In this document: positions 640 through 57,628 of the stretch, piece by piece
Layout of the letters: the number at the start of each line of letters is the position of its first letter
Position numbering within the stretch: position 1 is the stretch's first letter
DNA from: Hypanus sabinus
Taxonomy: Eukaryota
Direction: 5' to 3'
Length of the DNA stretch: 64,000 bases
NCBI RefSeq assembly: GCF_030144855.1
Contig: NC_082713.1
Span: 142,476,001 to 142,540,000, forward strand
Position numbers and translations under genes: made by a program
The notes under the pieces: generated by a model
The model's input: the letters and a program-made list of their open reading frames with translations, nothing else
What the model was told of the DNA's origin: nothing
Databases searched by the model: none

Positions 640-2075
640 CCATATTGGGTATTTTAGAGAAAAAAAATGCTTCCTATGACTATGCTCTCAGAGTGGGAGT
701 TTCAGGGCTGACATTGCAGGCAAGTTCATGGATCTTAAGGGAGATATAATCTCATTTGAAGTCCCCATTGCCATAGTCTATAGGGACACCTACTCCTATC
801 TTGACATCTCTAAGGGGCAGTTATCATAGAGATTTGGGATCCTCTGCAGCCACATCCCAAGTTCCCATACTCATACCTAGACTGATATATCTTTACAGAT
901 TAACATCTTGCTTTCTTGCACCACATCATTCACATAGTCACATCTGATGCATGTCCTATCTCACAATTTGACAATCATTTCAATTCTGGAGAGGTCACTG
1001 ATGTTCCACTCTGCCAGAAAAAAAAAACCCACCACTTTTTCTTAAAGAAGATGAAACTGAACGAGTAAATAGATTTGCCAGCAATGCTGGCTAACCTGAA
1101 ACTCAGAATATGGACCACTAGACTGCCCTCATGGGGTATTTTATGCTCCCTTCAAAACATGGAGCTCCTCACAAATCTTGAAAGTTCAATTCACCATAGA
1201 TCATCAAAGTTATTTTCTCATGGTCACTGTTTAAGCATTCATGGGAAACTTCAACTTGCCAGATATCTTTTAGGATAGTGCTGCTCTGAGGTCTGAACCT
1301 TGGGACCTATCCAACCTTCTCACACCTGTCTCTGATCCATAAATTCTGGTTGTGCATCATTACAATAAAAGTTATGGATCCTATTGAGAAATGCCATTGA
1401 CTTACTCAGTCTGAGATGCCACCATCCACACCAGTCCAGGACACAGTTCAAACATCGCTTCTAACATTGCTTTTATCTATTGCATCCAACATAATTAGCA
1501 GGAAACCTCAGCATTGCCAGGGGGACTACACTACAAGGTGGATAAAGAAGAGGGCACTGCAAACATTGGTGCAAAAGGATTATATCATCCAGCATTGTGG
1601 GCACACCCTCTCTAGACATGAATGACTTAGTAGCCTGGAAAAACTTGAGCACTCCATTTTCACTCACCACACTATTGCATACACTTCAATGTGAAACTGA
1701 TTTGCTGCCCAGAACACTGGAGCAATTCATTCCCAATGAGCAGAGTACAAGGGCGAAGGATACAGTGCAATGGCCAATATTTACTTCTTTGAAATTGAAC
1801 CTTTCAAAGTGAGGGGAAATGAAATACTGCATTATTGCATCACCCAAGACTCCAGAAGGTTGGTGGGGAATGAGTAGCCTTGCAATTAGTATTCTCACAA
1901 TCTCAGACAAAGTTTCCAGTTGAAGTGACCAGATACATTTTACTGTCCAAAGAACGTGTCTGATGGTTCTTTTAAGAGAATTTTGACAAGACACGTCATC
2001 ATATTTGACTCTCAGCTTCTGTAATTATTCATACCTCTCATTAAGGAAGGAGCATTGTCATGTAGGAATAAATAG
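640..2075 (+). mobile_element. Highly decayed LTR-retrotransposon-like remnant (possible Gypsy 3' region)
   Basis: Purine tract ttaaggaaggagca followed by TGTCA at about 2056 resembles PPT plus LTR start. No intact domain is readable. Confidence 0.25.
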
Positions 2076-2714
2076 TAGTTATCATCGATTTCTTACCATT
2101 TAAATCCATATAATTCACGCCAATTGGCTTTGGAGGCAGCTTTACAAATAAATGTCTTATCTTGGAGCAAAAATCTATATTATGCTTTTTCTAATTAAGA
2201 TGGTTTGACAAGATTTCCTTAATGTAATTGTTAAGGGTTAATGCCAGTTATAAACAGTAAACAGCAATTGATCCAGTTAAATACCAAAAGAACAATTGTA
2301 CAGTGCACTAATTGTTTCAGTTCTCTGTGAACTAATTTCAAAGTTTAGTTTAAGTTAATTGCTAGTGAAACAATTCTGAATCTAAGTTACTTAACATCAA
2401 ATGATAATTAAAGAATGCATGTTATTTAATTATATACATTAATTTATCTTTCCCTCGTAAATATTTTCCATCTAGGTTTGGATAGTCCAGTGTAATGACA
2501 AAGTGCCCCCACTGAGCTGTAGCCAAGCTGTTGGAAGCTGCTCCCTTTCACTAGACGGGTAAGCAGATGTCAATGATAAGCCTGACATTGCACATCTGGG
2601 GCCAGAGCAGAGATAGAAATAGATGAAATGTATTTTACTAGTGCATATATTTTTCTAGTAATTGTTGGTTCATTGTTACCTGCACTCTGCAGGCCTATTA
2701 TTAAGCCTTGCCAA

Positions 2715-3320
2715 TTAAAGAAGGCAAGACAGCAGCTATATGTAATTAGAAGTTTGAGGAGATTTTGTTTGTCGACTAAAACACTTGAAAACTTCTACAA
2801 GAGTATAGTGGAGAGCATTATGACTGGCTGCATCACTGTCTGGTATGGTGGGGTGGCTACTGCACAAACTGTAAGTTGCAGAAAGTTACGGGAAGTTACA
2901 GACTAGTCAGCTCCAACGTGGGTACTAGCCTCTGTGGTATCCAAGACATTTTCAAGGAGCGGTGCCTGGGTGGTGGCAGTTATTCAGGACCCCCACCATT
3001 TTGGACATGCCCTCTTCTCATTGTTACCTTTGGGAAGGAGGTACTGAAGCCTGAAGTCACACACTCAGCAATTCAGGATCAGTTTCTTCCCCTCTGCCAT
3101 CTGATTTCTAAATGGACATTGAACCCATGAACTCTATCTCACTACTTCTTTTTGCACTATTTTAACAACTATTTAATAGACATTTACAGTATATACTTAC
3201 TGTAATTCAGTTTCTTTTTCTCTATATTTATCCATCATGTATTTCATTGTACTGCTGTCATAAAGTTAACAGATTTCATGACATATGCCAATGATAGTAA
3301 ATCTGATTCTGATTCTGCTG
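2715..3320 (+). mobile_element. Rex1/Babar-type LINE 3' fragment
   Basis: KKARQQLYVIRSLRRF...FYKSIVESIMTGCITVWYG is the post-RT domain of Rex1/Babar; tail is taaatctgattctgattctg. Confidence 0.85.
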
Positions 3321-4169
3321 CATCTGAGCAGCATTCAGAGGGTTAAAGGTATGTTGGTTCTCTTCCATTCTGATCACTAGAGGTGGATTAATGCTGCTTT
3401 AGCAGCTGATGCAGGCAGAGATAGTACACCCAGTGGGAGCAGAAACTGCCAACCTGAAGTGAAAAGTATTGTCAGAAATCAGTCACTAAGCTATATATTG
3501 CAAAAGCAGTCCCCATATTCTTTAAGACTGTTCTGTGGAGGTACCTGACCCAATAGTCAGCACCCTTACTCTCTGTGGCCATTTTGAAACAATTATTGAA
3601 CAGCAGGAGTTAATGGGCCTCAATGCCCTGTTGAAACTCAAGTCAGTACAAAAAGCCTCTGGTCAGGGCTTTCACATGATCAATATGGACATAGTTAACT
3701 TTTAGTATAGCACCTTTAGAATAAGTACTCTGTGGTGCACTTAAAGAACAGCAGCAACTCTGTAGATCTCTCAAGAAGGACTTGATCTTCTCATCTCCTG
3801 TTCACTCCAACCTGACAAGGTAATTTATGGTCTGTGACTATTCAAATGCATGCCAACCAGGAACTTACAGAATTAATATTTCAAAAATAGTTGCTGAATC
3901 TTCTTCCAAACATCCACAATTTTTTTTTCTTACTGAGATGAAGGTGTGAGGAAGGAGTAAAACTTAATAACCTCAGTCAGCTCTTTTGCATCCAACAACG
4001 CCATCTCTAGCTCCCAGACTATACCCACTCTTATAAATCCTGAACATCAGGTAGACTTCTTCAGACCTCATGACTGCACTCTTGATCTATTTTAGCTGGA
4101 CTTTGTGCTCTGTAACCTGCTAAGTACCTATCCCAATACCTTTAATTCCTCTTCAGTGATATTAATAGA

Positions 4170-4758
4170 TTGAGGTGTACAAGCTCCTTGCCCCCGTTCT
4201 AAAGGCTGTATAGCTCTCTACAGGAGCACTATCGAGAGTGTCCTCTTCAGCTGCATCATTATGTGGTACGGAAGCTGTAAAGCATTGGACCGTAAGACCC
4301 TACAGAAGACAGTAAGAACTGCTGAGGAGATCATCGGGATTTTTATCCTCTCTATTTGTGACATTTAGCAGAAGCATTTGCAGATGAAAGGCCCAAATCA
4401 TTGTTGAATCCCACAATCTCTTTGACCCACTACCATTAGGAAGGAGGTTCAGGAGCATCAGGACTAGGAGTGCCAGACTGGATAACAGTTTCTTCCCTCA
4501 GTCTGTGAGACTAATGAATACCCTGTCACCACTGAGGTCTCGTCACTAGAACAGTGAGCTGTTTACTGTTTATCTGTGCTGTGCTTTACTACATGCATTT
4601 TGAATTATATTTTATTAACCCGTTTGTGGTATAATATTTTGGTTTATGTGCTGTTTGTGATATATGTTTTGTGGACGCACTATGGTCTGGGGGAATGTTA
4701 TTTGGTTGTATCTACTGTATGTGCATTCAGTTGACAATAAATTTGAACTTGAGCTTGA
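4170..4758 (+). mobile_element. Rex1/Babar-type LINE 3' fragment
   Basis: Degenerate YRSTIESVL..CIIMWYG coding remnant; tail is aataaatttgaacttgagcttga. Confidence 0.75.
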
Positions 4759-5366
4759 TCATTTTGATTACATGAACAACTCGATGATATCTTGCAGCAT
4801 TTTGTTTAGTATTAACTTAAATTGTTTTGGTTTGATTGGTAATTTGGTGTAGGCATACAAACATTGTCAAGTAGTTTTGATCCCTGGGTCCAAGTTCAAA
4901 GGTGTTCAAACGTGAGGAAACTTGCCAAAGTATCAAGTCCCTGATACTTTAGTCAAAATTACAACTGTAGTCAAACACGGAGCTTTCAATCATGCTGAAG
5001 ATAGATGCCTGTGCTTCTAACTGCCCACGCCATCAAAGGAGTCACCATTTAACTCCATAATAGTGAGGAGAATTTGAGTAAATATGATCGTGCTGGGGAA
5101 AAGGAGTGAAAGGCATTGGAGTCAGGGGAGCGATGTAATGAAAAAAGCAGATGCATATTTATTAATAAAATTAATGCATTTCATTGCTAAAAGTAAATCA
5201 GATCCCATTTCAGCACAATCTTTCACATTTGAAAGTCTTGATCTGATCAAGCTTTCAATCTCCTCACCCTTGACAAATTGAGGCTGTTTCCCCCCCCCCA
5301 CTATTTTGTAGCAGCTATCTTGCAAATCTCCATTCTGATTATGCAAGAAATGACTGTCATCTCTTA

Positions 5367-7795
5367 ACCAGAGAACATTACAGCACAGAAACAGGCCTTT
5401 TGGCCCTTCTTGGCAGTGCCAAACCATTTTTCTGCCTAGTCCCACTGACCTGCACCTGGGCCATATCCCTCCATACACCTTTCATCCATATACCTGTCCA
5501 AGTTTTTCTTAAATGTTAAAAGTGAGCCCACATTCACCATTTCATCTGGCAGCTCATTCCACACTCCCACCACTCTCTGTATGAAGGAGCCCCCCCCAAT
5601 GTTCCCTTTAAACTTTTCCTCCTTCATCCTTAACCCATGACCTCTGGTTTTTTTCTCCCCTGATCTCAGTGGAAAAAGCCTGCTTGCATTCACTCTATCT
5701 ATACCCATCATAATTTTATACACCTCTATCAAACCACCCCTCATTCTCCTATATGCCAGGGAATAAAGTCCTAACCTATTCAACCTTCCTCTGTAACTCA
5801 GTTTCTCAAGTCCTGGCAACATCCTTGTAAACTTTCTCTGCACTCTTTCAACCTTATTAATATCCTTCCTGTAATTCGGTGACCAAAACTGCACACAATA
5901 CTCCAAATTCGGCCTCACCAATGTCTTATACAACCTCACTATTACATTCCAACTCCTATACTCAATACTTTGATTTATAAAGGCCAATGTACCAACAGCT
6001 CTCTTTATGACCCTATCTACCTGTGACGCCACTTTTAGGGAATTATGTATCTGTACTCCCAAATCCCTCTGTTCTACTGCACTCCTCAGTGTCCTACCAT
6101 TTACCTTGTATGTTCTACCTTGGTTTTCCCTTCTAAAGTGCAATACCTCACACTTGTCTGTATTCAACTCCAACTGCCATTTTTCTGCCCATTCCTCCAA
6201 CTGATCCAAATCCCTCTGCAAGCTTTGAAAACCTTCCTCTCTGTCCACTACACCTCCAATCTTTGTATCATCAGCAAATTTGCTGATCCAATTTGCCACA
6301 TTATCATCCAGATCATTGATATAGATGACAAATAACAATGGACCCAGCACTGATCCCTGTGGCACACCACTAGTCACAGGCCTCCACTACCACTCTCTGA
6401 CTTCTTCCATTGAGCCAATGTTTAATCCAATTTACTACCTCTCCATGTATACCTAGCGACTGAATCTTCCTAACTAACCTCCCATGCGGGACCTTGTCAA
6501 AGGCCTTTCTGAAGTCCATGTATACAACATTCACTGCCTTCCCTTCATCCACTTTCCTGGTAACTTCCTCAAAAAACTCTAATAGATTGGTCAAACATGA
6601 CCTACCATGCACAAAGCCATGCTGACTGTTTCTAATAAGTCCCTGTCTATCCAAATACTTGTAGATCTTATCTCTTAGTATTCCTTCCAATAACTTACCT
6701 ACTACCGATGTCAAACTTACCAGCCTATAATTTCCCGGCTTACTTTTTGAGCCTTTTTTAAATAACGGAACTACATGAGCTATCCTCCAATCATCCGGCA
6801 CCTGACCCATGGATATTGACATTTTAAATATTTCTGCCAGGGCCCCTGCAATTTCAACACTAGTCTCCCTCAAAGTCCGAGGGAATACCCTGTCAGGTCC
6901 TGGGGACTTATCTACTCTGATTTGCCTCAAGACAGCAATCACCTCTTCCTCTTCAATCTGTATAAGTTCCATGACCTCCCTACTTGTTTGCCTTGTTTCC
7001 ATAGACTCCATTCCAGTTTCCTTAGTAAATACAGATGCAAAAAACCCATTTAATATCTCTCCCATTTCTTTTGGTTCCATACATAGCTGACCACTCTGAC
7101 CTTCAAGAGGACCAATTTTATCCCTTACTATCCTTTTGCTCTTAACATACCTGTAGAAGCTCTTAGGATTATCCTTCACCTTGACTGCCAAAGCAACCTC
7201 ATGTCTTCTTTTAGCCCTCCTGATTTCTTTCTTAAGTATTTTCTTACTCTTTTTATACTCCTCAAGCATCTTATTTCCTCCTTGTTGCCTATACATGTTA
7301 TACATCTCTTTCTTCTTCTTTATCAGAGTTCCAATATCCCTCAAGAACCAAGGTTCCTAATTCTTATTCGTTTTGTCTTTAACCCTCACAGGAACATACG
7401 AACTCTGCACTCTCAAAATTTCTCCTTTGAAGGCCTCCCACTTACCAATCACATCCTTGCCAGAGAACAACCTGTCCCAATCTACGCTTTTTCGATCCTT
7501 TCTCATTCCTTCAAATTTGGCCTTTTTCCAGTTTAGAACTTCAACCCAAGGACAAGATCTATCTTTATCCATGACCAAGTTGAAACTAATGACGTTATGA
7601 TCACTGGAACCAAAGTGTTCCCCTACACACACTTCCGTCACATGCCCTAACTCATTTCCTAATAGGAGATCTAATATTGCATCCTCCCTAGTTGGAACAA
7701 CTATATATTGATTTAGAAAACTTTCCTGAATACACTTCACAAACTCTAACCAATCTAGACCCTTAACAGTATGGGAGTCCCAATCAATTTCCAAT
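5367..7795 (-). mobile_element. Relatively young, 5'-truncated CR1 LINE (end of endonuclease, RT, 3' UTR), split by frameshifts
   Basis: ORFs 7357-7812, 6370-7344 and 5436-6377 contain PTREDAILDLLL, GSSDHN, KSPGPD, QHGF, VYMDFRKAFDKVPH, GVPQGSVLGP, KFADDTK; typical CR1 3' end near 5370. Confidence 0.95.
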
Positions 7796-9101
7796 TTGGT
7801 TAAAATACTCAATTATGTTGCAGTCCACACTAAAACACATCTAGAAATGTTCTTTGGTGAGATATTTTTCACATTTCATCATTAACCATTCTTAAAAATA
7901 AATACAATTTGTAAATTCAAAACATTGCTGAATTTTGTATGACTCAATTTTTTGAGCAACTGGCACTATAAATTGTAAAGCAGTTGGATATACAAAATAA
8001 AGTGTAGGCAGCAAAGAGATTGGTCTTATAAGTAATGTTATTCATATAATCTCTGTTCTATAGCATTTCTTATGGTCCCATTCAAAATTCTTGAGTGGAG
8101 AAGTGTTATGTAATGGTCTCTGGACCAGTTTTAAGGCAGTAATTAGTACATTTAAGAAAATATGTTCACCAATATATAACAAAGATAACTTGTTTCAAGT
8201 TTTACCAATTTCAGTGATTAAATGGTATGAATAGTAAAATTATAAAACTAGATTTAACAGTACTCATGGAAAAGTCATTGCTGAAGGATGAACTTGCTTA
8301 ATGCAAAAATCAGGAACCTGCAGAAAATTCAAAATAATTAAGCCTGTTAGTTATTCCTCTGGTAATAGGAATGCCATATTGCAACCAATTTGTATGAATG
8401 CATGAACACAAGAAAATAAAATGGGGTAACACTTTAATCTGTGAAATTTGGATCAAGTTCAATAACCTGAAACTGCAAATATAATTGAAGATGCTGTGGC
8501 TGTTGAGCTGATTGAAGGGTTTGTGATAATAGGTGAGGGAGAGGAAAGTAATTGGGTTTATGAACTCTTCCTTGACCAGGTTAATTACATAGATTCAAGT
8601 TTCAAAGTCATTTTTTAAATATAGTTTGAGCTTCTATAATCCAGCACCATTGGGACCTGAGGAGTGCCGGATTAGTGAAAATGCCGAATTACAGAAGGAT
8701 CACATTAAACAATAGCTAACCGCCTCAAATATAATTTTAAATACCTTTAAAATATCATGTAAATCAATACAAGTTAGATAATAATGAAAGAGAAATATTA
8801 AATGAGTAGCAAGTGAAATTTTAATAAAGTAATATACTGTACAAGCACAGATAAAATAAAGGGTACAGGTAAATGTACAGGAATTATACAGAACAGTTGA
8901 GCACTTCCACTTCTTAAGTGAGATGTTTAATATACCTTCAGGCAAAGTTACTTGTCTGCACATGTGGGGTTGTCAGGATCATCAACATCTTCGTCTTGAA
9001 GAATGAGTGAAGCATCAGGAACTGGAGCTGAAACTGGCACAACATTTTCTTCAAAAACTGTTGATGTTGGTGGCAGCACATCTGGGTGAGCAGAAGCAGA
9101 A

Positions 9102-9280
9102 GTCGGAGAAAGGAGGTCTTCTATACGCCACATTGCATGCGACTGCCAGGCCACCAGTGATTCAGCGCTGGGCTCTTCCCTCTTCACCCGCAGTTACTGA
9201 GTGAATCCTCGTTAGTTTCTTTTCCTCTGCTTAGTAACATGCTTAAATTCAGCAGGTTGCCACATCTGATCTGAGGTCGT
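9102..9280 (-). rRNA. 28S rRNA 5'-end fragment (non-functional, CpG-decayed copy)
   Basis: Minus strand: CGACCTCAGATCAGATGTGGCAACCTGCTGAATTTAAGCATGTTACTAAGCAGAGGAAAAGAAACTAACGAGGATTCACTCAGTAACTGCGGGTGAAGAGGGAAGAGCCCAGCGCTGAATC, matching the conserved 5' end of vertebrate 28S. Confidence 0.93.
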
Positions 9281-9425
9281 AGGCAGAAGAGAATGAAATG
9301 CCGGCCAAGTGATGCCGGAGGGCAGTGCGTGACTGCTGGCAGGTAGGCGAGAAGGCAGACTGGTCCAACATGTGCCAGCTCCCCTGCCGCTGGCGGGCGA
9401 GATGGGCAGGTGCTGGGTGCCCTTG
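9281..9425 (-). other. Putative ITS2 3' segment contiguous with the 28S fragment
   Basis: GC-rich block immediately 5' of the 28S start on the minus strand, sharply different from the AT-rich flanks. Confidence 0.65.
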
Positions 9426-10129
9426 CCTCACACAATGATATTAATAAATGCAGGAAAACAAGCAGGAATCACCTGTCTGTGCTTACAAGAGCACACCAAC
9501 ATGTGAACAGATCTAGTGCAACCAAAATAACGTACAGCAGATTGGTAAGGTGGGCTGGAAAATTTGAAATTACAGTTGCACGGAAAATTTGAAATCAGTG
9601 CCAGATTATTGAAGGAACCAGTTTACAGGTAGTCAGATTAGTGAAGGTAGACGTGTATATAAATTCCAGGGCTGCTTTGAAAGGAATTATAGTATGACCA
9701 TTCATTGCTATTTGCTGGTAAGATATTCTATTCAGGAAGTGAAGTAATTCCAGATCAACTCAATATAGACACTCTGGCACCAAAATATTTTTCTTGACAC
9801 TCAAAATGGGAGTCACAGATTCAAGTGTATATGAGAAAAGCAGTAATTCCTTCACTCGATGTGCAGGAACTATGCAGAAAAGCTTCAATCTCACCATTTG
9901 ATTTTATCATGTTCACAGTGAATAACTATGTTATAAATGTAAGCAAGATTCCAAATTCAGCCTCCAAATTGTGTGAAATATGCTGGAGTCCATTAGGTCA
10001 GTAATAGGGTTTACGTAGTCTCTGTTGCCAGTGGCCATCAGTAAAGAAACAGTATGAGTGTGAAATACAAACATGAGAAAATCTGTAGATGTTGGAACAC
10101 ACAGAAAATGTAATGTAAAAGGCAAACAA

Positions 10130-11100
10130 AATTGAAAAGAGTGATATGAATAAGGGCTGAAGGTGTTATATTTGAATGCACAGTATATGGAATAAGATAG
10201 ATGAACTTGTAACACAGTTGCAGATCGGCAGGTATGATGTTGTCGGCATCACTGAATCATGGCTGAAAGAAGTTTATACCTAGGATCTTAATGTCCAAGG
10301 ATACACATTGTATCTAAAGGACAGGCAGGAAGGCAGAGGGAACAGTGTTCTGTTGGCAAAAAAATGAAATCAAATCATTAGAAAGAAGTGACATAGGCTT
10401 GGAAGCTGTAGAATCATTATGTAACTGCAAGAGTAAACAGACTCTGGTGGGAGTTGTATACAGCTACCCCCACCCCCTCAAAAAACAGAAGTAAGGAAGT
10501 ATTCCACAATTTACAACGGGAGAAAGAAAATGCATGCCAAAAGGGAAAGGTTACACTAGTCATGGGGGATCTCAATATGCAGGTAGATTGGGAAAACCAG
10601 TTTGGTGCTGGATTCCAAGAGGGGGAATTTCTAGAATGTCCACAAGATGTCTTTTTAGAGCAGTTCACTAGGGGATAAGCTATTCTGGGTTGGGAGTTGT
10701 GCAATGAACCAGAATTGATTAGAGAGCTGAAGGTAAAAGAACCCTGAGGGGAAAGTAATCATAATATAATTAAATTCACCCTGAAATTTGAGGAAAAGTC
10801 TATCAGTTGGCCAGAATTGATTGGAAAAGAACACTGGCAGGTATGACGGCAGAGCAACAATGGCTGGAATTTCTGGAAGCAATTCAGAAGGCACAGGATA
10901 TATACACCTGAAAGAGGAACAAGTATTCTGCAGGCAAGATGACACAAACACGGCTAACAAGAGAAGTCAAAGCCAACATAAAAGCCAAAGAGAGGGCATA
11001 CAATACAGCAAAAATCAGTGGGAAGTTAGGGGATCGGGAGCCTTTAAAAACCAACAGAAGGCAACTAAAAAGCCATAAAAAGGTAAAGATGGAATTCAAA
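10130..11100 (+). mobile_element. Decayed CR1 LINE, endonuclease region
   Basis: Remnant motifs KVLYLNA, GITESWL, VMGDLNMQVDW. Confidence 0.8.
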
Positions 11101-11103
11101 AGT

Positions 11104-11243
11104 AGAACATAGAAAACCTACAACACAATACAGGCCCTTTGGCCCACAATGCTGTGCCAAACATGTACTTACTTTAGAAATTACCTCGTGTTACCCATAG
11201 CCTCTATTTTTCTAAGCTCCATGTACCTATCCAGGAGCCTCTT
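11104..11243 (-). mobile_element. CR1 3'-end fragment
   Basis: agaacatagaaaacctacaacacaatacaggccctttggccc is the reverse complement of the CR1 tail, also seen at about 23865 and 28620. Confidence 0.75.
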
Positions 11244-11249
11244 TTTGGT

Positions 11250-11512
11250 TATTTAGAGATACAGCATGGAACAGGCCCTTCTGGCCCAATGAGTTATGCC
11301 ACCCAACTACCCACCCATTTAACACTAGCCTAATCACAAGGACAATCTACAGTGACCAATTAACCTACTAACTGGTATATCTTTGGACTGTGGGAGAAAT
11401 CTGGAGCACCCTGAGGAAACCCACGTGGTCATGGGGAGAAGATACAAACTCATTACAGACAACACTGGAAATGAACACCAACCTGCAATAGCATCGCACT
11501 ATTTAGCTGTGG
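11250..11512 (-). mobile_element. HE1-like V-SINE (tRNA head, V domain, CR1-like tail)
   Basis: Reverse complement contains gagtttgtatcttctccccatgaccacgtgggtttcctcagggtgctccagatttctcccacagtccaaag (V-domain core). Confidence 0.75.
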
Positions 11513-18204: not shown

Positions 18205-19032
18205 TACAACACTGCACTGATTGGCCTAATCTCAAATAATAATGAGGTGGCCTACAGAGAAGAAGTCATCACCCTGAAACAGTGGCGTCAAGAAAACAAC
18301 CTCTCCCTCAATGTCTCAAAAACAAAGGAGCTGGTTGTGGACTATGGGAGGAATGGAGACAGGCTAGCCCCGATTGACTTCAATGGATCTGGCGTTGGGA
18401 GGGTGAACAGCTTTAAGTTCCTTGGCATAAACATCACTGAGGATCTCACGTGGTTTGTACATACTGGCTGTGTGGTGGAAAAGGCACAACAGCGCCTCTT
18501 TCACCTCAGACTGTTGAAGAGGTTTAGTATGAGCCCCCAAATCCCAAGAACTTTCTATAGGGGCACAATTGAGAGCATCCTGACTGGCTGCATCACTGCC
18601 TGGTATGGGAACTGTACTTCCCTCAATCGCAGGACTCTGCAGAGGGTTTTGCAGACAGCCCAGTGCATCTGCAGATATGAACTTCCCACTGTTCAGGATA
18701 TTTACAAAGGGATGTAAAAAGGGCCCAAAGGATCATTGGAGACCCGAGTCACCCCAGCCACAAACTGTTCCAGTTGCTACCATCTGGGAAATGGTACCGC
18801 AGCATAAAAGCCAGGAGCAACAGGCTTTGGGACAACTTCTTTCACCAGACCATCAGACTACTTAATTCATGCTGACGCTACTGTATTTCTATGTTATACT
18901 GACTATCCATTGAGCATACTATTTATTATAAATTACTATAAATTGCACATTGCACATTTAGATGGAGACGTAACAAAGATTTTTACTCCTCACGTATATG
19001 AAGGATGTAAATAATAATTCAGTTCAATTCAA
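18205..19032 (+). mobile_element. Rex1/Babar-type LINE (RT C-terminus to 3' tail)
   Basis: NNLSLNVSKTKELVVDY...FKFLGINITEDLTW...FYRGTIESILTGCITAWYG; tail is aataattcagttcaattcaat. Confidence 0.9.
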
Positions 19033-55730: not shown

Positions 55731-56321
55731 GTCCACCATTGTTGCTCTTTGCAATGCTTACTATTATTAACACTTTGTCGGCGTGTCCCACACACTGCTC
55801 TTGTAAAACTTACGAAGTGGATTGCAGCAATCTTGGCTTGGTGACTATCCCAACAGACATTCCATCAGACATTAAATTTCTCTCGCTCAGTAACAATAAA
55901 CTCAGAACCTTCCAGGCTCTCACATTCACTAATTTTACCACATTGGAGAAGCTGGACCTGTCCAACAACTACCTGGACCAACTACCATCGGATGCATTTG
56001 ATTACATCAGGAACCTGATTGACCTCAATTTGCGAAACAACAGCATTCGAAGCCTGGATAAAAATATCTTCTATAAAACCACCAACCTGCAGAGGTTAGA
56101 CCTTTCTGTTAATGGCCTCTCTCAGATTCCACTACTTTTATTTGATGAAATGCAGAACTTGACCTGGTTGAATTTGGAAGAGAATAGGATGCCAAATCTC
56201 GAAAGAGAGGTCTTTGAGCCACTTGAAGTTCTCCAGCAATTGCTGCTTGGCGGGAACCCCTGGGAGTGTGACTGCAGTCTGAGGGAGTTCAAACACTGGA
56301 TGGAATGGTTCCAGTACAAAG
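55731..56321 (+). CDS. LRTM2: LRTM2 exon: signal peptide, LRRNT, LRRs, start of LRRCT
   Basis: Acceptor tcctccacag at 55730; CPTHCSC..EVDCS, LDLSNN, LRNNSIR, NPWECDCSLREFKHWMEWF; donor AAG|GTGAGT; phase 1 at both ends (591 nt). Confidence 0.95.
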
Positions 56322-57628
56322 GTGAGTGGAACAAATCAATACAACTACAAATATACCTGCTACCCTGAGCTGAATTTTAATTTCTCCAAGATCACTTGGA
56401 ATAAAATTGAGTTCAAGCATATATGTATTAATGAGCCTAAATGGGAAAATAACAAGCTTTATTTCTATCTTTTGTAATGGATGATCACAATCAGTATAGC
56501 AGTGAGGCAAAGTGACTTGAACAATTGGATGTCAATGAATATTCATTGTTGTGATTACTTTATAAATATTAGGAAGACCAAGACCGGCTCTTTCCCAAAA
56601 TCCAGATTCTAGACACCACCACTACTTGCTTCTGTAAATATCTAAACAAAAATGTTTAGTCTTGGAGACCAGTTTCTAATTATTTCATCAAAGCGATATG
56701 CATCTTCTCCCTAACATGCCTTAGTTCATCTGTTGCTAAACTCTCATCCCTGCCTATGTTAGCTTTAGAAATTCAGAAATACTATCTTAATGAAATCTCT
56801 GTGCACTAATTTAACACTGTGCAACACCGTACCACCTTCTATTCACATAACCAAAAATTTGCCATGATTACATTACTCCTAATATGGCAAAGCCTCAATT
56901 TTAATGTGTTCACCTTTGTTCTCCTATGACCCTACTCTTTCCATCCTTGACCCATCCTTTAACCCATCTCTTTGAGCTAAAAGTGCTTCCCTAATTCTTG
57001 AATTTCCACAATCCCTTTTGCCAACCCTTGGTTGACCAAACATTGAACTACCTTTGTCATAAATCTGGAATTCACTTTTGTAAAATTTGCCCTTTCTCTA
57101 CTACTTTATATCCTTTAAAATGTTATATAAAGTGCACTTTTTTAAACACCTATGCTAATATATCACTTCATGATGTATAGTTTTAGTTTTTTGATAACAG
57201 CTCCATCGAAAAGTGAAATAAAGTACATAACTCTGTCAAAGGTGATATAGAAATGTAACTTATTTTTGTCTTATGCCTCCTATTGAAAGGGTATTTCAAT
57301 GAGTCAGTAAATGATTTTGTTATGAATCGGTGTTTCCAGTGGAGAATAGCACATAAATTAATTGCAGCAACTTAATAATTTCTCTTCTTCCATTTAAAAT
57401 ATGAAAAATACTGAACTATGTTCCTGGGATTTCACATGTTGCATACCTACAGGTACAAAATTAACCAGGTGTCACTTCCCAATTTGAAATCAAATGCGAT
57501 ATGGCTGAGTGAAAAGGAAAGAGAAAATTCATTGCTAATAATTTGTGAAAAAGTGTAAAGCTAAACTAATTTTTAAGCAGATGATAATTTTGTAAAGTTA
57601 TTATTGTGTAGTGACTTAAATTCTTTAA

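What the first reader, a model, noticed from the sequence alone, without database searches (positions are those of the whole stretch)
8622..9655. Tigger/pogo-like DNA transposon carrying an ITS2-28S rDNA fragment in place of its transposase
Seen: TA-flanked element with degenerate TIRs and subterminal repeats. On the minus strand it contains about 145 nt of GC-rich sequence running into the exact 5' end of 28S rRNA (about 180 nt), then an acidic transposase-like tail ending DEDVDDPDNPTCADK*. The 28S copy shows CpG-to-TpG/CpA decay (GACGTGGCGACCCG to GATGTGGCAACCTG; AAGCGGAGG to AAGCAGAGG). Inference: because spacer sequence is included, the donor was rDNA or pre-rRNA rather than mature 28S, probably acquired by gap-repair template switching (Pack-TIR-like). 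If amplified, this is an rDNA-carrying MITE family that would scatter 28S/ITS2 pseudo-copies and could confound ITS2-based ray identification.
Basis: partly seen in the sequence, partly recalled or inferred. Interest (0 to 1): 0.75.

Follow-up and report, generated by a model that had tools for sequence, protein, structure and literature searches.

The report
Transposon family carrying a 28S rDNA piece
This is one old, decayed copy of a roughly 1-kb cut-and-paste transposon family, found at hundreds or more sites in this genome and its relatives, whose interior holds the first ~170 bases of the 28S ribosomal RNA gene and probably the spacer just before it; it is a tidy curiosity that this scan has met before, not a new mechanism.

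Summary
Window 8622-9655 is a TA-flanked element. Its decayed ends match a family terminal repeat (CAGGTCGACCTTCACTAATC), which I recovered from contigs of three other organisms. On the minus strand, the Rfam eukaryotic LSU model aligns from model position 1 at 9279 to about 9105-9117 (91.5 bits, E 2e-22). A 154-nt GC-rich stretch (9281-9434) lies directly upstream of it.

The element is a high-copy family. Contig depth rises from 4-15 in the flanks to thousands inside it. Other copies' contigs bridge both rDNA junctions, so one rDNA piece was captured once and then amplified. Related organisms carry this same insertion at the same site.

The ends resemble published Tigger terminal repeats (CAG...TAATCCGG, with a TA duplication).

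Two points were not shown. No host rDNA could be reached, so ITS2 identity of 9281-9434 is probable only. The "transposase-like tail" has no detectable relative. The worry about ITS2 barcoding is overstated, because the element has no 5.8S.

This scan has already flagged the same family at four other places in this genome, and two of those were followed up. It also found a hAT family carrying the 28S 3' end. Verdict: real, but a new member of a known kind (cargo-carrying non-autonomous transposons).

The parts
8620..8621 (.). TA target-site duplication, left
   Evidence: Loose-end consensus of other copies shows TA before CAGG.
8622..8648 (+). Terminal inverted repeat (decayed). In the sense of the rDNA and ORF this is the 3' end of the element.
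   Evidence: 16/22 match to the family consensus TACAGGTCGACCTTCACTAATC. Contains the motif CTTCtaTAATCCaGCAC.
8665..8682 (-). Internal copy of the TIR motif (reads TTTTCACTAATCCGGCAC on the minus strand). With the terminal copy it forms an inverted pair at this end.
8649..8947 (-). AT-rich non-coding 3' part of the transposon backbone
   Evidence: 32% GC. High family depth. No Pfam hit.
8948..9105 (-). Backbone segment holding the non-rDNA part of the 79-aa ORF (acidic end DEDVDDPDNPTCADK*). A transposase origin is not shown.
   Evidence: ORF. It stays open in the family-majority letters. No relatives found. Not 28S: the LSU model finds nothing beyond about model position 178.
9106..9280 (-). 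5' end of 28S rRNA (model positions 1 to about 170, including the D1 hairpin), decayed
   Evidence: Rfam LSU_rRNA_eukarya 91.5 bits, E 2.3e-22, model position 1 at 9279; 74.3 bits. X22 rDNA reads lie on 9159-9280.
9281..9434 (-). GC-rich segment contiguous with the 28S 5' end; probable 3' end of ITS2 (not verified)
   Evidence: 64% GC. Loose-end consensus of other copies is about 87% GC with about 6 CpG per 30 nt. Depth here is 20-50 times lower than in the rest of the element, as expected from independent CpG decay. Alignment to other copies resumes sharply at 9434.
9435..9631 (-). 5' subterminal backbone with repeats (GGAAAATTTGAAAT twice at 9557 and 9582; internal TIR motif at 9598-9615)
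   Evidence: High family depth.
9632..9655 (-). Terminal inverted repeat. In the sense of the rDNA and ORF this is the 5' end of the element.
   Evidence: 20/22 match to the family consensus. It is the only match in the window with up to 3 mismatches, where 0 are expected.
9656..9657 (.). TA target-site duplication, right
   Evidence: Loose ends of other copies read ...CTG TA and then unrelated sequence.

Best explanation
Window 8622-9655 is a dead copy of a non-autonomous, roughly 1-kb cut-and-paste DNA transposon of the TA-targeting Tc1/mariner-pogo group. Its terminal repeats are Tigger-like.

Read on the minus strand, the layout is:
- terminal repeat plus about 220 nt of backbone;
- about 154 nt of once very CpG-rich sequence, most likely the 3' end of ITS2;
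- the first ~170 nt of 28S rRNA;
- about 155 nt holding the end of an ORF;
- about 300 nt of AT-rich backbone and the other terminal repeat.

Shown: one contiguous rDNA piece was already inside the founder element. It was then copied to hundreds or more sites in several related species by a transposase supplied in trans. This copy inserted at a TA before those species split, and it has since decayed, largely at CpG sites.

Inferred, not shown: the rDNA piece replaced the transposase gene during repair of an excision gap by template switching onto the rDNA array. It is passive cargo with no function.
For: Boundaries, TA duplication and terminal repeats.

28S identity and its exact 5' end: plus X22 rDNA reads ending at 9280.

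Family status: summed contig depth rises from 3.7-15 in the flanks to about 1,500-11,500 inside 8604-9674 in three organisms, with 2281, 1022 and 1336 contigs laid.

Shared junctions (table 8):
- X1 records 2-6 bridge the backbone/28S junction (for example 8967-9293 and 9027-9366).
- X6 record 21 covers 9165-9343.
- X5 record 14 covers 9248-9460, which spans the whole GC-rich part and the far junction.

Ancestral 28S was nearer to the real gene: the family-majority letters at 9188, 9202, 9228, 9238, 9254 and 9264 equal those of genuine rDNA reads and the Rfam consensus.

Orthologous insertion: X5 contigs span both element/flank junctions (8400-8660 and 9604-9900). An X1 flank contig about 5% diverged from the window runs on to about 8675.

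Tigger likeness: published Tigger terminal repeats are 18-23 nt in Chondrichthyes, with a TA duplication. Several share CAG...GAC...TAATCCGG with this family, for example CAGTGGACCCCCGATAATCCGGC. Leucoraja erinacea has CAGTAAAACTCAGATAATCTGG (PMC9219625).

Other copies in the same genome were flagged independently by this scan.
Against: No transposase, and no autonomous partner was found, so the superfamily assignment rests on the TA duplication and a 20-odd-nt terminal repeat only. The left terminus of this copy matches the consensus at only 16/22.

ITS2 identity was never compared with a real ITS2. The stretch shows no excess RNA structure (z = +0.46), which is uninformative after decay. It is unlike the ITS2 end of organism X22, whose relatedness to the host is unknown.

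The depth figures are sums over contigs, and the tool warns that they are not copy numbers.

The host's own rDNA contigs may have been filtered out as human-like, so nothing can be said about them.

The capture mechanism is inference.
Confidence: 0.85

Rival explanations
1. The 28S piece is real cargo, but the GC-rich 154 nt upstream is not ITS2. The capture would have started at the mature 28S 5' end (for example from mature rRNA), and the GC-rich stretch is unrelated host or transposon sequence.
For: Similarity to genuine rDNA of X22 stops exactly at the mature 5' end. The LSU model starts at position 1. No ITS2 comparison was possible. There is no structural signal.
Against: ITS2 is not conserved between distant taxa, so the break at 9280 is expected under the ITS2 reading too. 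The ancestral state of the stretch was about 87% GC and very CpG-dense (loose ends). That is typical of vertebrate rDNA spacers and unusual for transposon backbone in a CpG-depleted genome (window CpG o/e 0.18). One contiguous donor is simpler than two.
Confidence: 0.15
2. A one-off event: an rDNA fragment (orphon-like) inserted into this single transposon copy, so there is no rDNA-bearing family.
For: No second copy exists in the 64-kb window.
Against: Many contigs from three other organisms bridge the same backbone/28S and GC-rich/backbone junctions. The rDNA part has family-level depth. Four other copies in this genome were flagged with the same cargo.
Confidence: 0.01
3. The capture went through RNA. 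Ends of abundant pre-rRNA species (a 5'-extended 28S precursor cut within ITS2) were copied into a transposon break by RNA-templated repair or reverse transcription, rather than copied from the rDNA array.
For: According to earlier scan notes, which I did not check, a second and unrelated (hAT) family of the same genome carries the other end of 28S plus the 3' ETS. Both cargoes therefore straddle an end of 28S and include spacer, as precursor ends would.
Against: Ascertainment bias applies: only fragments with conserved rRNA get recognised. Two cases are too few. DNA-templated gap repair explains filler DNA in many transposons. The ITS2 cleavage site of this host is unknown.
Confidence: 0.06
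4. The rDNA piece is foreign. The family arrived by horizontal transfer and carries the donor species' ITS2-28S, not the host's.
For: Tigger elements are reported to transfer horizontally, with Chondrichthyes involved (PMC9219625). The host's rDNA was not available for comparison.
Against: The family is shared by several related organisms and includes an orthologous insertion, so it is old in this lineage. Nothing in the 28S core distinguishes a donor.
Confidence: 0.04

Closest known systems
Non-autonomous Tigger/pogo derivatives (Tigger-type MITEs; Tigger family as surveyed in PMC9219625)
   Same: TA target-site duplication. Terminal repeat of about 22 nt starting with CAG and containing TAATCCGG, as in several published Tigger terminal repeats. 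About 1 kb, no transposase, high copy number.
   Different: The interior is not just a deletion derivative: about 330 nt is host rDNA. No autonomous partner with these ends was identified. The internal copies of the terminal-repeat motif are arranged asymmetrically at the two ends.
Pack-MULE / Pack-type 'transduplicating' DNA transposons (Jiang et al. 2004, cited in PMC10946416)
   Same: A non-autonomous TIR element that picked up a host DNA fragment between its ends and amplified it.
   Different: Different superfamily (TA-targeting Tc1/mariner-pogo group rather than Mutator or CACTA), and an animal host. The cargo is non-coding rDNA (spacer plus the start of 28S), not exons.
Pokey / mPok of Daphnia (piggyBac), which carry repeats derived from the rDNA intergenic spacer
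   Same: A DNA transposon and its MITEs holding rDNA-derived sequence (PMC10946416, Table 2).
   Different: Pokey inserts site-specifically into 28S, and its cargo is IGS repeats. Here insertion is at generic TA sites outside rDNA, and the cargo is ITS2(?)-28S.
SINE28 (mammalian SINE with a 28S-derived body)
   Same: It scatters 28S fragments through the genome (PMC10946416).
   Different: SINE28 is a retroposon. The present family has terminal inverted repeats and a TA duplication, and no poly(A) tail.
hAT family of the same genome carrying the 28S 3' end plus 3' ETS (scan notes s1-213484, s1-203383, s1-187821, s1-223200)
   Same: Same host and same kind of event: a cut-and-paste family with a piece spanning a 28S boundary and adjoining spacer, amplified to many copies.
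   Different: Unrelated superfamily, the other end of 28S, and an independent capture. Known to me only from earlier notes, which I did not check here.

Membership tests
Tc1/mariner-pogo group (IS630-Tc1-mariner), Tigger family | TA target-site duplication | tested here: met
   TA at 8620-21 and 9656-57. TA also flanks the consensus ends of other copies (loose ends).
Tc1/mariner-pogo group (IS630-Tc1-mariner), Tigger family | Short terminal inverted repeats (Tigger: about 18-25 nt, usually starting with CAG) | tested here: met
   Family consensus is CAGGTCGACCTTCACTAATC at both ends. This copy matches 16/22 on the left and 20/22 on the right. The length range comes from PMC9219625.
Tc1/mariner-pogo group (IS630-Tc1-mariner), Tigger family | Terminal-repeat sequence similar to known Tigger terminal repeats | tested here: inconclusive
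   The family shares CAG, GAC and TAATCCGG at like positions with TIRs listed in PMC9219625 supplementary file 6 (Ceratitis, Coccinella). It matches only about 13/23 of the Leucoraja erinacea Tigger TIR. Suggestive, but too short for proof.
Tc1/mariner-pogo group (IS630-Tc1-mariner), Tigger family | pogo-type DDE transposase with CENP-B/HTH DNA-binding domains (in the element or in an autonomous partner with the same ends) | tested here: not met
   No Pfam domain in any ORF of the element. The tail ORF has no relatives. No pogo ORF in the window. A missing transposase is expected for a non-autonomous copy. The partner could not be searched for because no eukaryotic genome collection was available.
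Amplified non-autonomous (MITE-like) family | Many copies sharing ends and interior, in different flanks | tested here: met
   Depth is 100 to over 1,000 times that of the flanks in three organisms. Thousands of contig pieces were laid. Loose ends run into unrelated AT-rich flanks. Four more copies were noted in this genome.
Pack-type (host-fragment-carrying) transposon | Host-derived fragment lies between the ends and is shared by the family with fixed junctions | tested here: met
   LSU model 91.5 bits. Junction-bridging contigs from other copies (table 8).
Eukaryotic LSU (28S) rRNA, 5' end | Match to the Rfam RF02543 model above its gathering score, starting at model position 1 | tested here: met
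   91.5 bits against a gathering score of 50. Model positions 1-178 on 9279-9099, with the D1 hairpin recognisable.
ITS2 (3' end) | Sequence identity with the host's spacer directly upstream of 28S | not testable with these tools
   No host rDNA could be reached. Metagenome scans gave 0 hits. The ORF word search gave nothing. rDNA contigs may be filtered out by read laying. Only indirect support exists: contiguity with 28S position 1 and a CpG-dense ancestral state.

The most novel reading that the evidence does not exclude
Two unrelated cut-and-paste families of this genome carry the two ends of 28S together with adjoining spacer. This Tigger-like family holds the ITS2 end plus the 28S 5' end. 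According to earlier scan notes that I did not check, a hAT family holds the 28S 3' end plus the 3' ETS. If that is not chance or ascertainment, the cargo may have been copied from pre-rRNA processing intermediates (RNA-templated repair of transposon excision breaks), or it may reflect a nucleolar break hot spot. Either would make these families a natural record of RNA-templated or nucleolus-biased DNA repair in a vertebrate germ line.
Probability: 0.06. Interest if true: 0.75.

Novelty: new member of a known kind. Interest (0 to 1): 0.35.

Why it matters
A TA-targeting, Tigger-like family that spreads an rDNA fragment is not among the cases of rDNA inside transposons tabulated in a 2024 review (PMC10946416). 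It therefore adds a vertebrate example of cargo capture by this transposon group.

There are practical consequences. Hundreds or more dispersed 28S/ITS2-like pseudo-copies will inflate or blur several analyses in these species:
- rDNA copy-number estimates;
- calls of intragenomic rDNA variants;
- shotgun or k-mer based barcoding;
- repeat-masker "LSU-rRNA" annotation.

Standard 5.8S-to-28S PCR should not be affected, because the element has no 5.8S.

The shared orthologous insertion and the family's distribution can serve as phylogenetic markers among the related species that hold it.

Tried and rejected
- Whole-window Rfam scans (gathering; E-value mode) returned nothing. Only short-stretch scans found the 28S piece, so the blanks reflect the speed filters and not the sequence.
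- Self-BLAST of the window found no second copy.
- Pfam on the ORFs of the element found nothing.
- Word-based protein searches with the ITS2/28S ORF and with the tail ORF found nothing. I had hoped to reach rDNA ORFs or other copies this way.
- The full HMMER search with the tail ORF gave two hits, an AAA_12 repeat protein and a PAS histidine kinase. I reject both as low-complexity chance matches.
- Metagenome scans for the terminal repeat and for the spacer/28S junction gave 0 hits.
- RNA folding of the GC-rich part showed no signal (z = +0.46).
- Literature searches found no description of this family.
- I considered and rejected that the tail region is a continuation of 28S. The LSU model finds no conserved core beyond about position 178, and rDNA reads of X22 do not lie there.
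- I considered and rejected a retroposon origin. The element has terminal inverted repeats and a TA duplication, and no poly(A) tail.

Full report
**What is there.** The stretch 8622-9655 is bounded by TA on both sides (8620-8621 and 9656-9657). The window holds no second copy, so I laid contigs of three public runs (organisms A, B, C) and raw reads of a fourth (organism J) on 8400-9900.

Summed contig depth is 3.7-15 in both flanks. It jumps to roughly 1,500-11,500 between 8604 and 9674, and 2281, 1022 and 1336 contig pieces were laid from the three runs. The tool warns that these sums are not copy numbers. They do show a repeat present at the order of hundreds or more sites in each organism.

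Where other copies leave this one, their loose ends give the family's termini. On the left they read ...TA CAGGTCGACCTTCAC running into 8637. On the right they read ...CTG TA, followed by unrelated AT-rich sequence. This copy matches the 22-nt consensus TACAGGTCGACCTTCACTAATC at 16/22 on the left and 20/22 on the right. With up to three mismatches, the 20-nt consensus occurs only at the right end of the element in 64 kb, where none is expected.

**The rDNA piece.** A short-stretch Rfam scan aligns the eukaryotic LSU model to the minus strand at 91.5 bits (E 2.3e-22). Model position 1 falls at window 9279. The alignment runs through the conserved 5' core and the D1 hairpin to about 9117 with good posterior probability, and fades by about 9099 (74.3 bits). 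Whole-window scans missed this hit, which is a filter effect.

Organism J gives independent support. It lacks the family altogether, and its reads lie only on 9159-9280. Eighty-three of them diverge exactly behind 9280 into J's own spacer.

At the six places in the conserved core where nearly all family contigs differ from this copy (9188, 9202, 9228, 9238, 9254, 9264), J's genuine rDNA carries the family letter. The founder's 28S was thus closer to the real gene, and this copy has decayed since. Three of the six changes are CpG to TpG/CpA, and there is another CpG change at 9153.

Beyond about model position 178 there is no LSU similarity. The following ORF-bearing segment is therefore not 28S.

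**The GC-rich part.** 9281-9434 is 64% GC in a 40% GC window whose CpG o/e is 0.18. Family depth here drops 20-50 fold. Many contigs "skip" 9293-9434 with a similar number of unalignable letters in between, and alignment resumes sharply at 9434.

Loose-end consensus letters from other copies, for example GGCGGGTGCCGGGCGGCCGCGCCTCACGCA, show an ancestral state of about 87% GC with about 6 CpG per 30 nt. Independent CpG decay of such a sequence pushes copies beyond the 80% likeness cut-off, which explains the dip.

A CpG-dense segment contiguous with 28S position 1 is most simply the 3' end of ITS2. I could not compare it with any host ITS2, for these reasons:
- Protein-word searches with the spanning ORF found nothing.
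- Two metagenome scans found nothing.
- Read laying may silently drop rDNA contigs as human-like.
- RNA folding gave no signal.

I rate ITS2 identity at about 0.7-0.8. It is not shown.

**Family-wide junctions and age.** Contigs from other copies bridge the backbone/28S junction: X1 records 2-6, for example 8967-9293 and 9027-9366. They also bridge the 28S/GC-rich boundary (X6 record 21, 9165-9343) and the whole GC-rich part into the far backbone (X5 record 14, 9248-9460). So the rDNA piece was in the founder and was amplified with it. A one-off insertion is excluded.

Organism B has contigs spanning both element/flank junctions of this very locus (8400-8660 and 9604-9900). Organism A has a flank contig about 5% diverged from the window that continues to about 8675. 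This insertion therefore predates the split of these organisms.

Nine coded organisms hold words of the element.

**Which transposon.** No ORF of the element has a Pfam domain. The window's large ORFs include a LINE reverse transcriptase next door but no pogo transposase.

The 79-aa ORF ending DEDVDDPDNPTCADK* is real, and it stays open with the family-majority letters. But it has no relatives in the word search or among 1.84 billion representatives, apart from two spurious repetitive proteins. Three ORFs of about 80 aa or more in 1 kb is also about what chance gives. "Transposase-like tail" is thus unsupported, though not refuted.

The superfamily call rests on the ends. A published survey gives Tigger a TA duplication and terminal repeats of 18-23 nt in Chondrichthyes (PMC9219625). 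Its supplementary table lists Tigger terminal repeats such as CAGTGGACCCCCGATAATCCGGC, CAGTAGAGACTCGATAATCCGGA and, for the little skate, CAGTAAAACTCAGATAATCTGG. These share CAG, GAC and TAATCCGG at like positions with this family's CAGGTCGACCTTCACTAATCCGG. In this copy the intact TAATCCGG survives in the internal motif copy at 8665-8682. This is suggestive of Tigger, but short.

**Mechanism.**
- Shown: a non-autonomous TA/TIR element with a fixed rDNA insert was amplified in trans.
- Inferred from established knowledge of how internally deleted and "filler"-bearing DNA transposons arise: the insert replaced the transposase region during repair of an excision gap, by template switching onto the multi-copy rDNA.
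- Nothing suggests that the cargo has a function.

**Comparison with what is known.** A 2024 review of rDNA-transposon interplay tabulates rDNA-derived sequences in transposons: Pokey/mPok with IGS repeats, SINE28, and 5S-derived SINEs and Cassandra/Ajax. It lists no Tc1/mariner-pogo element with ITS2-28S (PMC10946416). My other literature searches found no description either. Repbase and Dfam could not be consulted.

The principle, cargo capture by non-autonomous DNA transposons, is well known from Pack-MULEs and similar elements. I therefore class this as a new member of a known kind.

**Earlier notes of this scan.** The same family was flagged at four other places in this genome. Two of these were followed up, with the same conclusion. 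A second, hAT family of the same genome is reported to carry the 28S 3' end plus the 3' ETS. I did not check those notes.

That both families hold an end of 28S with adjoining spacer is curious. It may be ascertainment, since only pieces with conserved rRNA are recognised. I record the RNA-templated or nucleolar hot-spot idea as the novel case, at low probability.

The element has no 5.8S and at most the last ~150 nt of ITS2, so 5.8S-to-28S amplicons cannot arise from it (inference). Shotgun, mapping and k-mer analyses of rDNA would be affected.

The window has no N.

Noticed in passing
window 5436-7812 (minus): Three consecutive ORFs (313, 324 and 151 aa). The first two match reverse transcriptase RVT_1 (E 3e-14 and 9e-17). 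This is a LINE-like retrotransposon remnant about 0.8 kb upstream of the element.
   Followed up: partly
window 55739-56368 (plus): A 209-aa ORF with LRRNT plus leucine-rich repeats (LRR_8, E 1.5e-38). Probably an exon of a host LRR protein gene.
   Followed up: no
window 18247-18717 (plus): A 156-aa ORF with a match to ALKBH8_N (E 8.6e-10).
   Followed up: no
window 8631-8682 and 9598-9647: The internal copies of the terminal-repeat motif CTTCACTAATCCGGCAC all point the same way on the + strand. The left end is therefore an inverted (hairpin-like) pair and the right end a direct pair, which makes the two ends asymmetric.
   Followed up: partly
same genome, other pieces (scan notes s1-213484, s1-203383, s1-187821, s1-223200): An unrelated hAT family is reported to carry the 3' end of 28S plus the 3' ETS. 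Two transposon families of one genome would then hold the two ends of 28S with adjoining spacer.
   Followed up: no
window 9159-9280 (run X22, organism J): Organism J has normal rDNA depth on the 28S core but no read anywhere else on the element. The family is therefore absent there, or over 20% diverged. J's 28S reads T at 9262 where the family has A.
   Followed up: partly
whole window (Rfam scans): Whole-window Rfam scans, both at the gathering threshold and in E-value mode, miss the 28S fragment that scores 74-91 bits when 0.5-1.3 kb is scanned. Blank whole-window scans should not be read as absence of rRNA fragments.
   Followed up: yes
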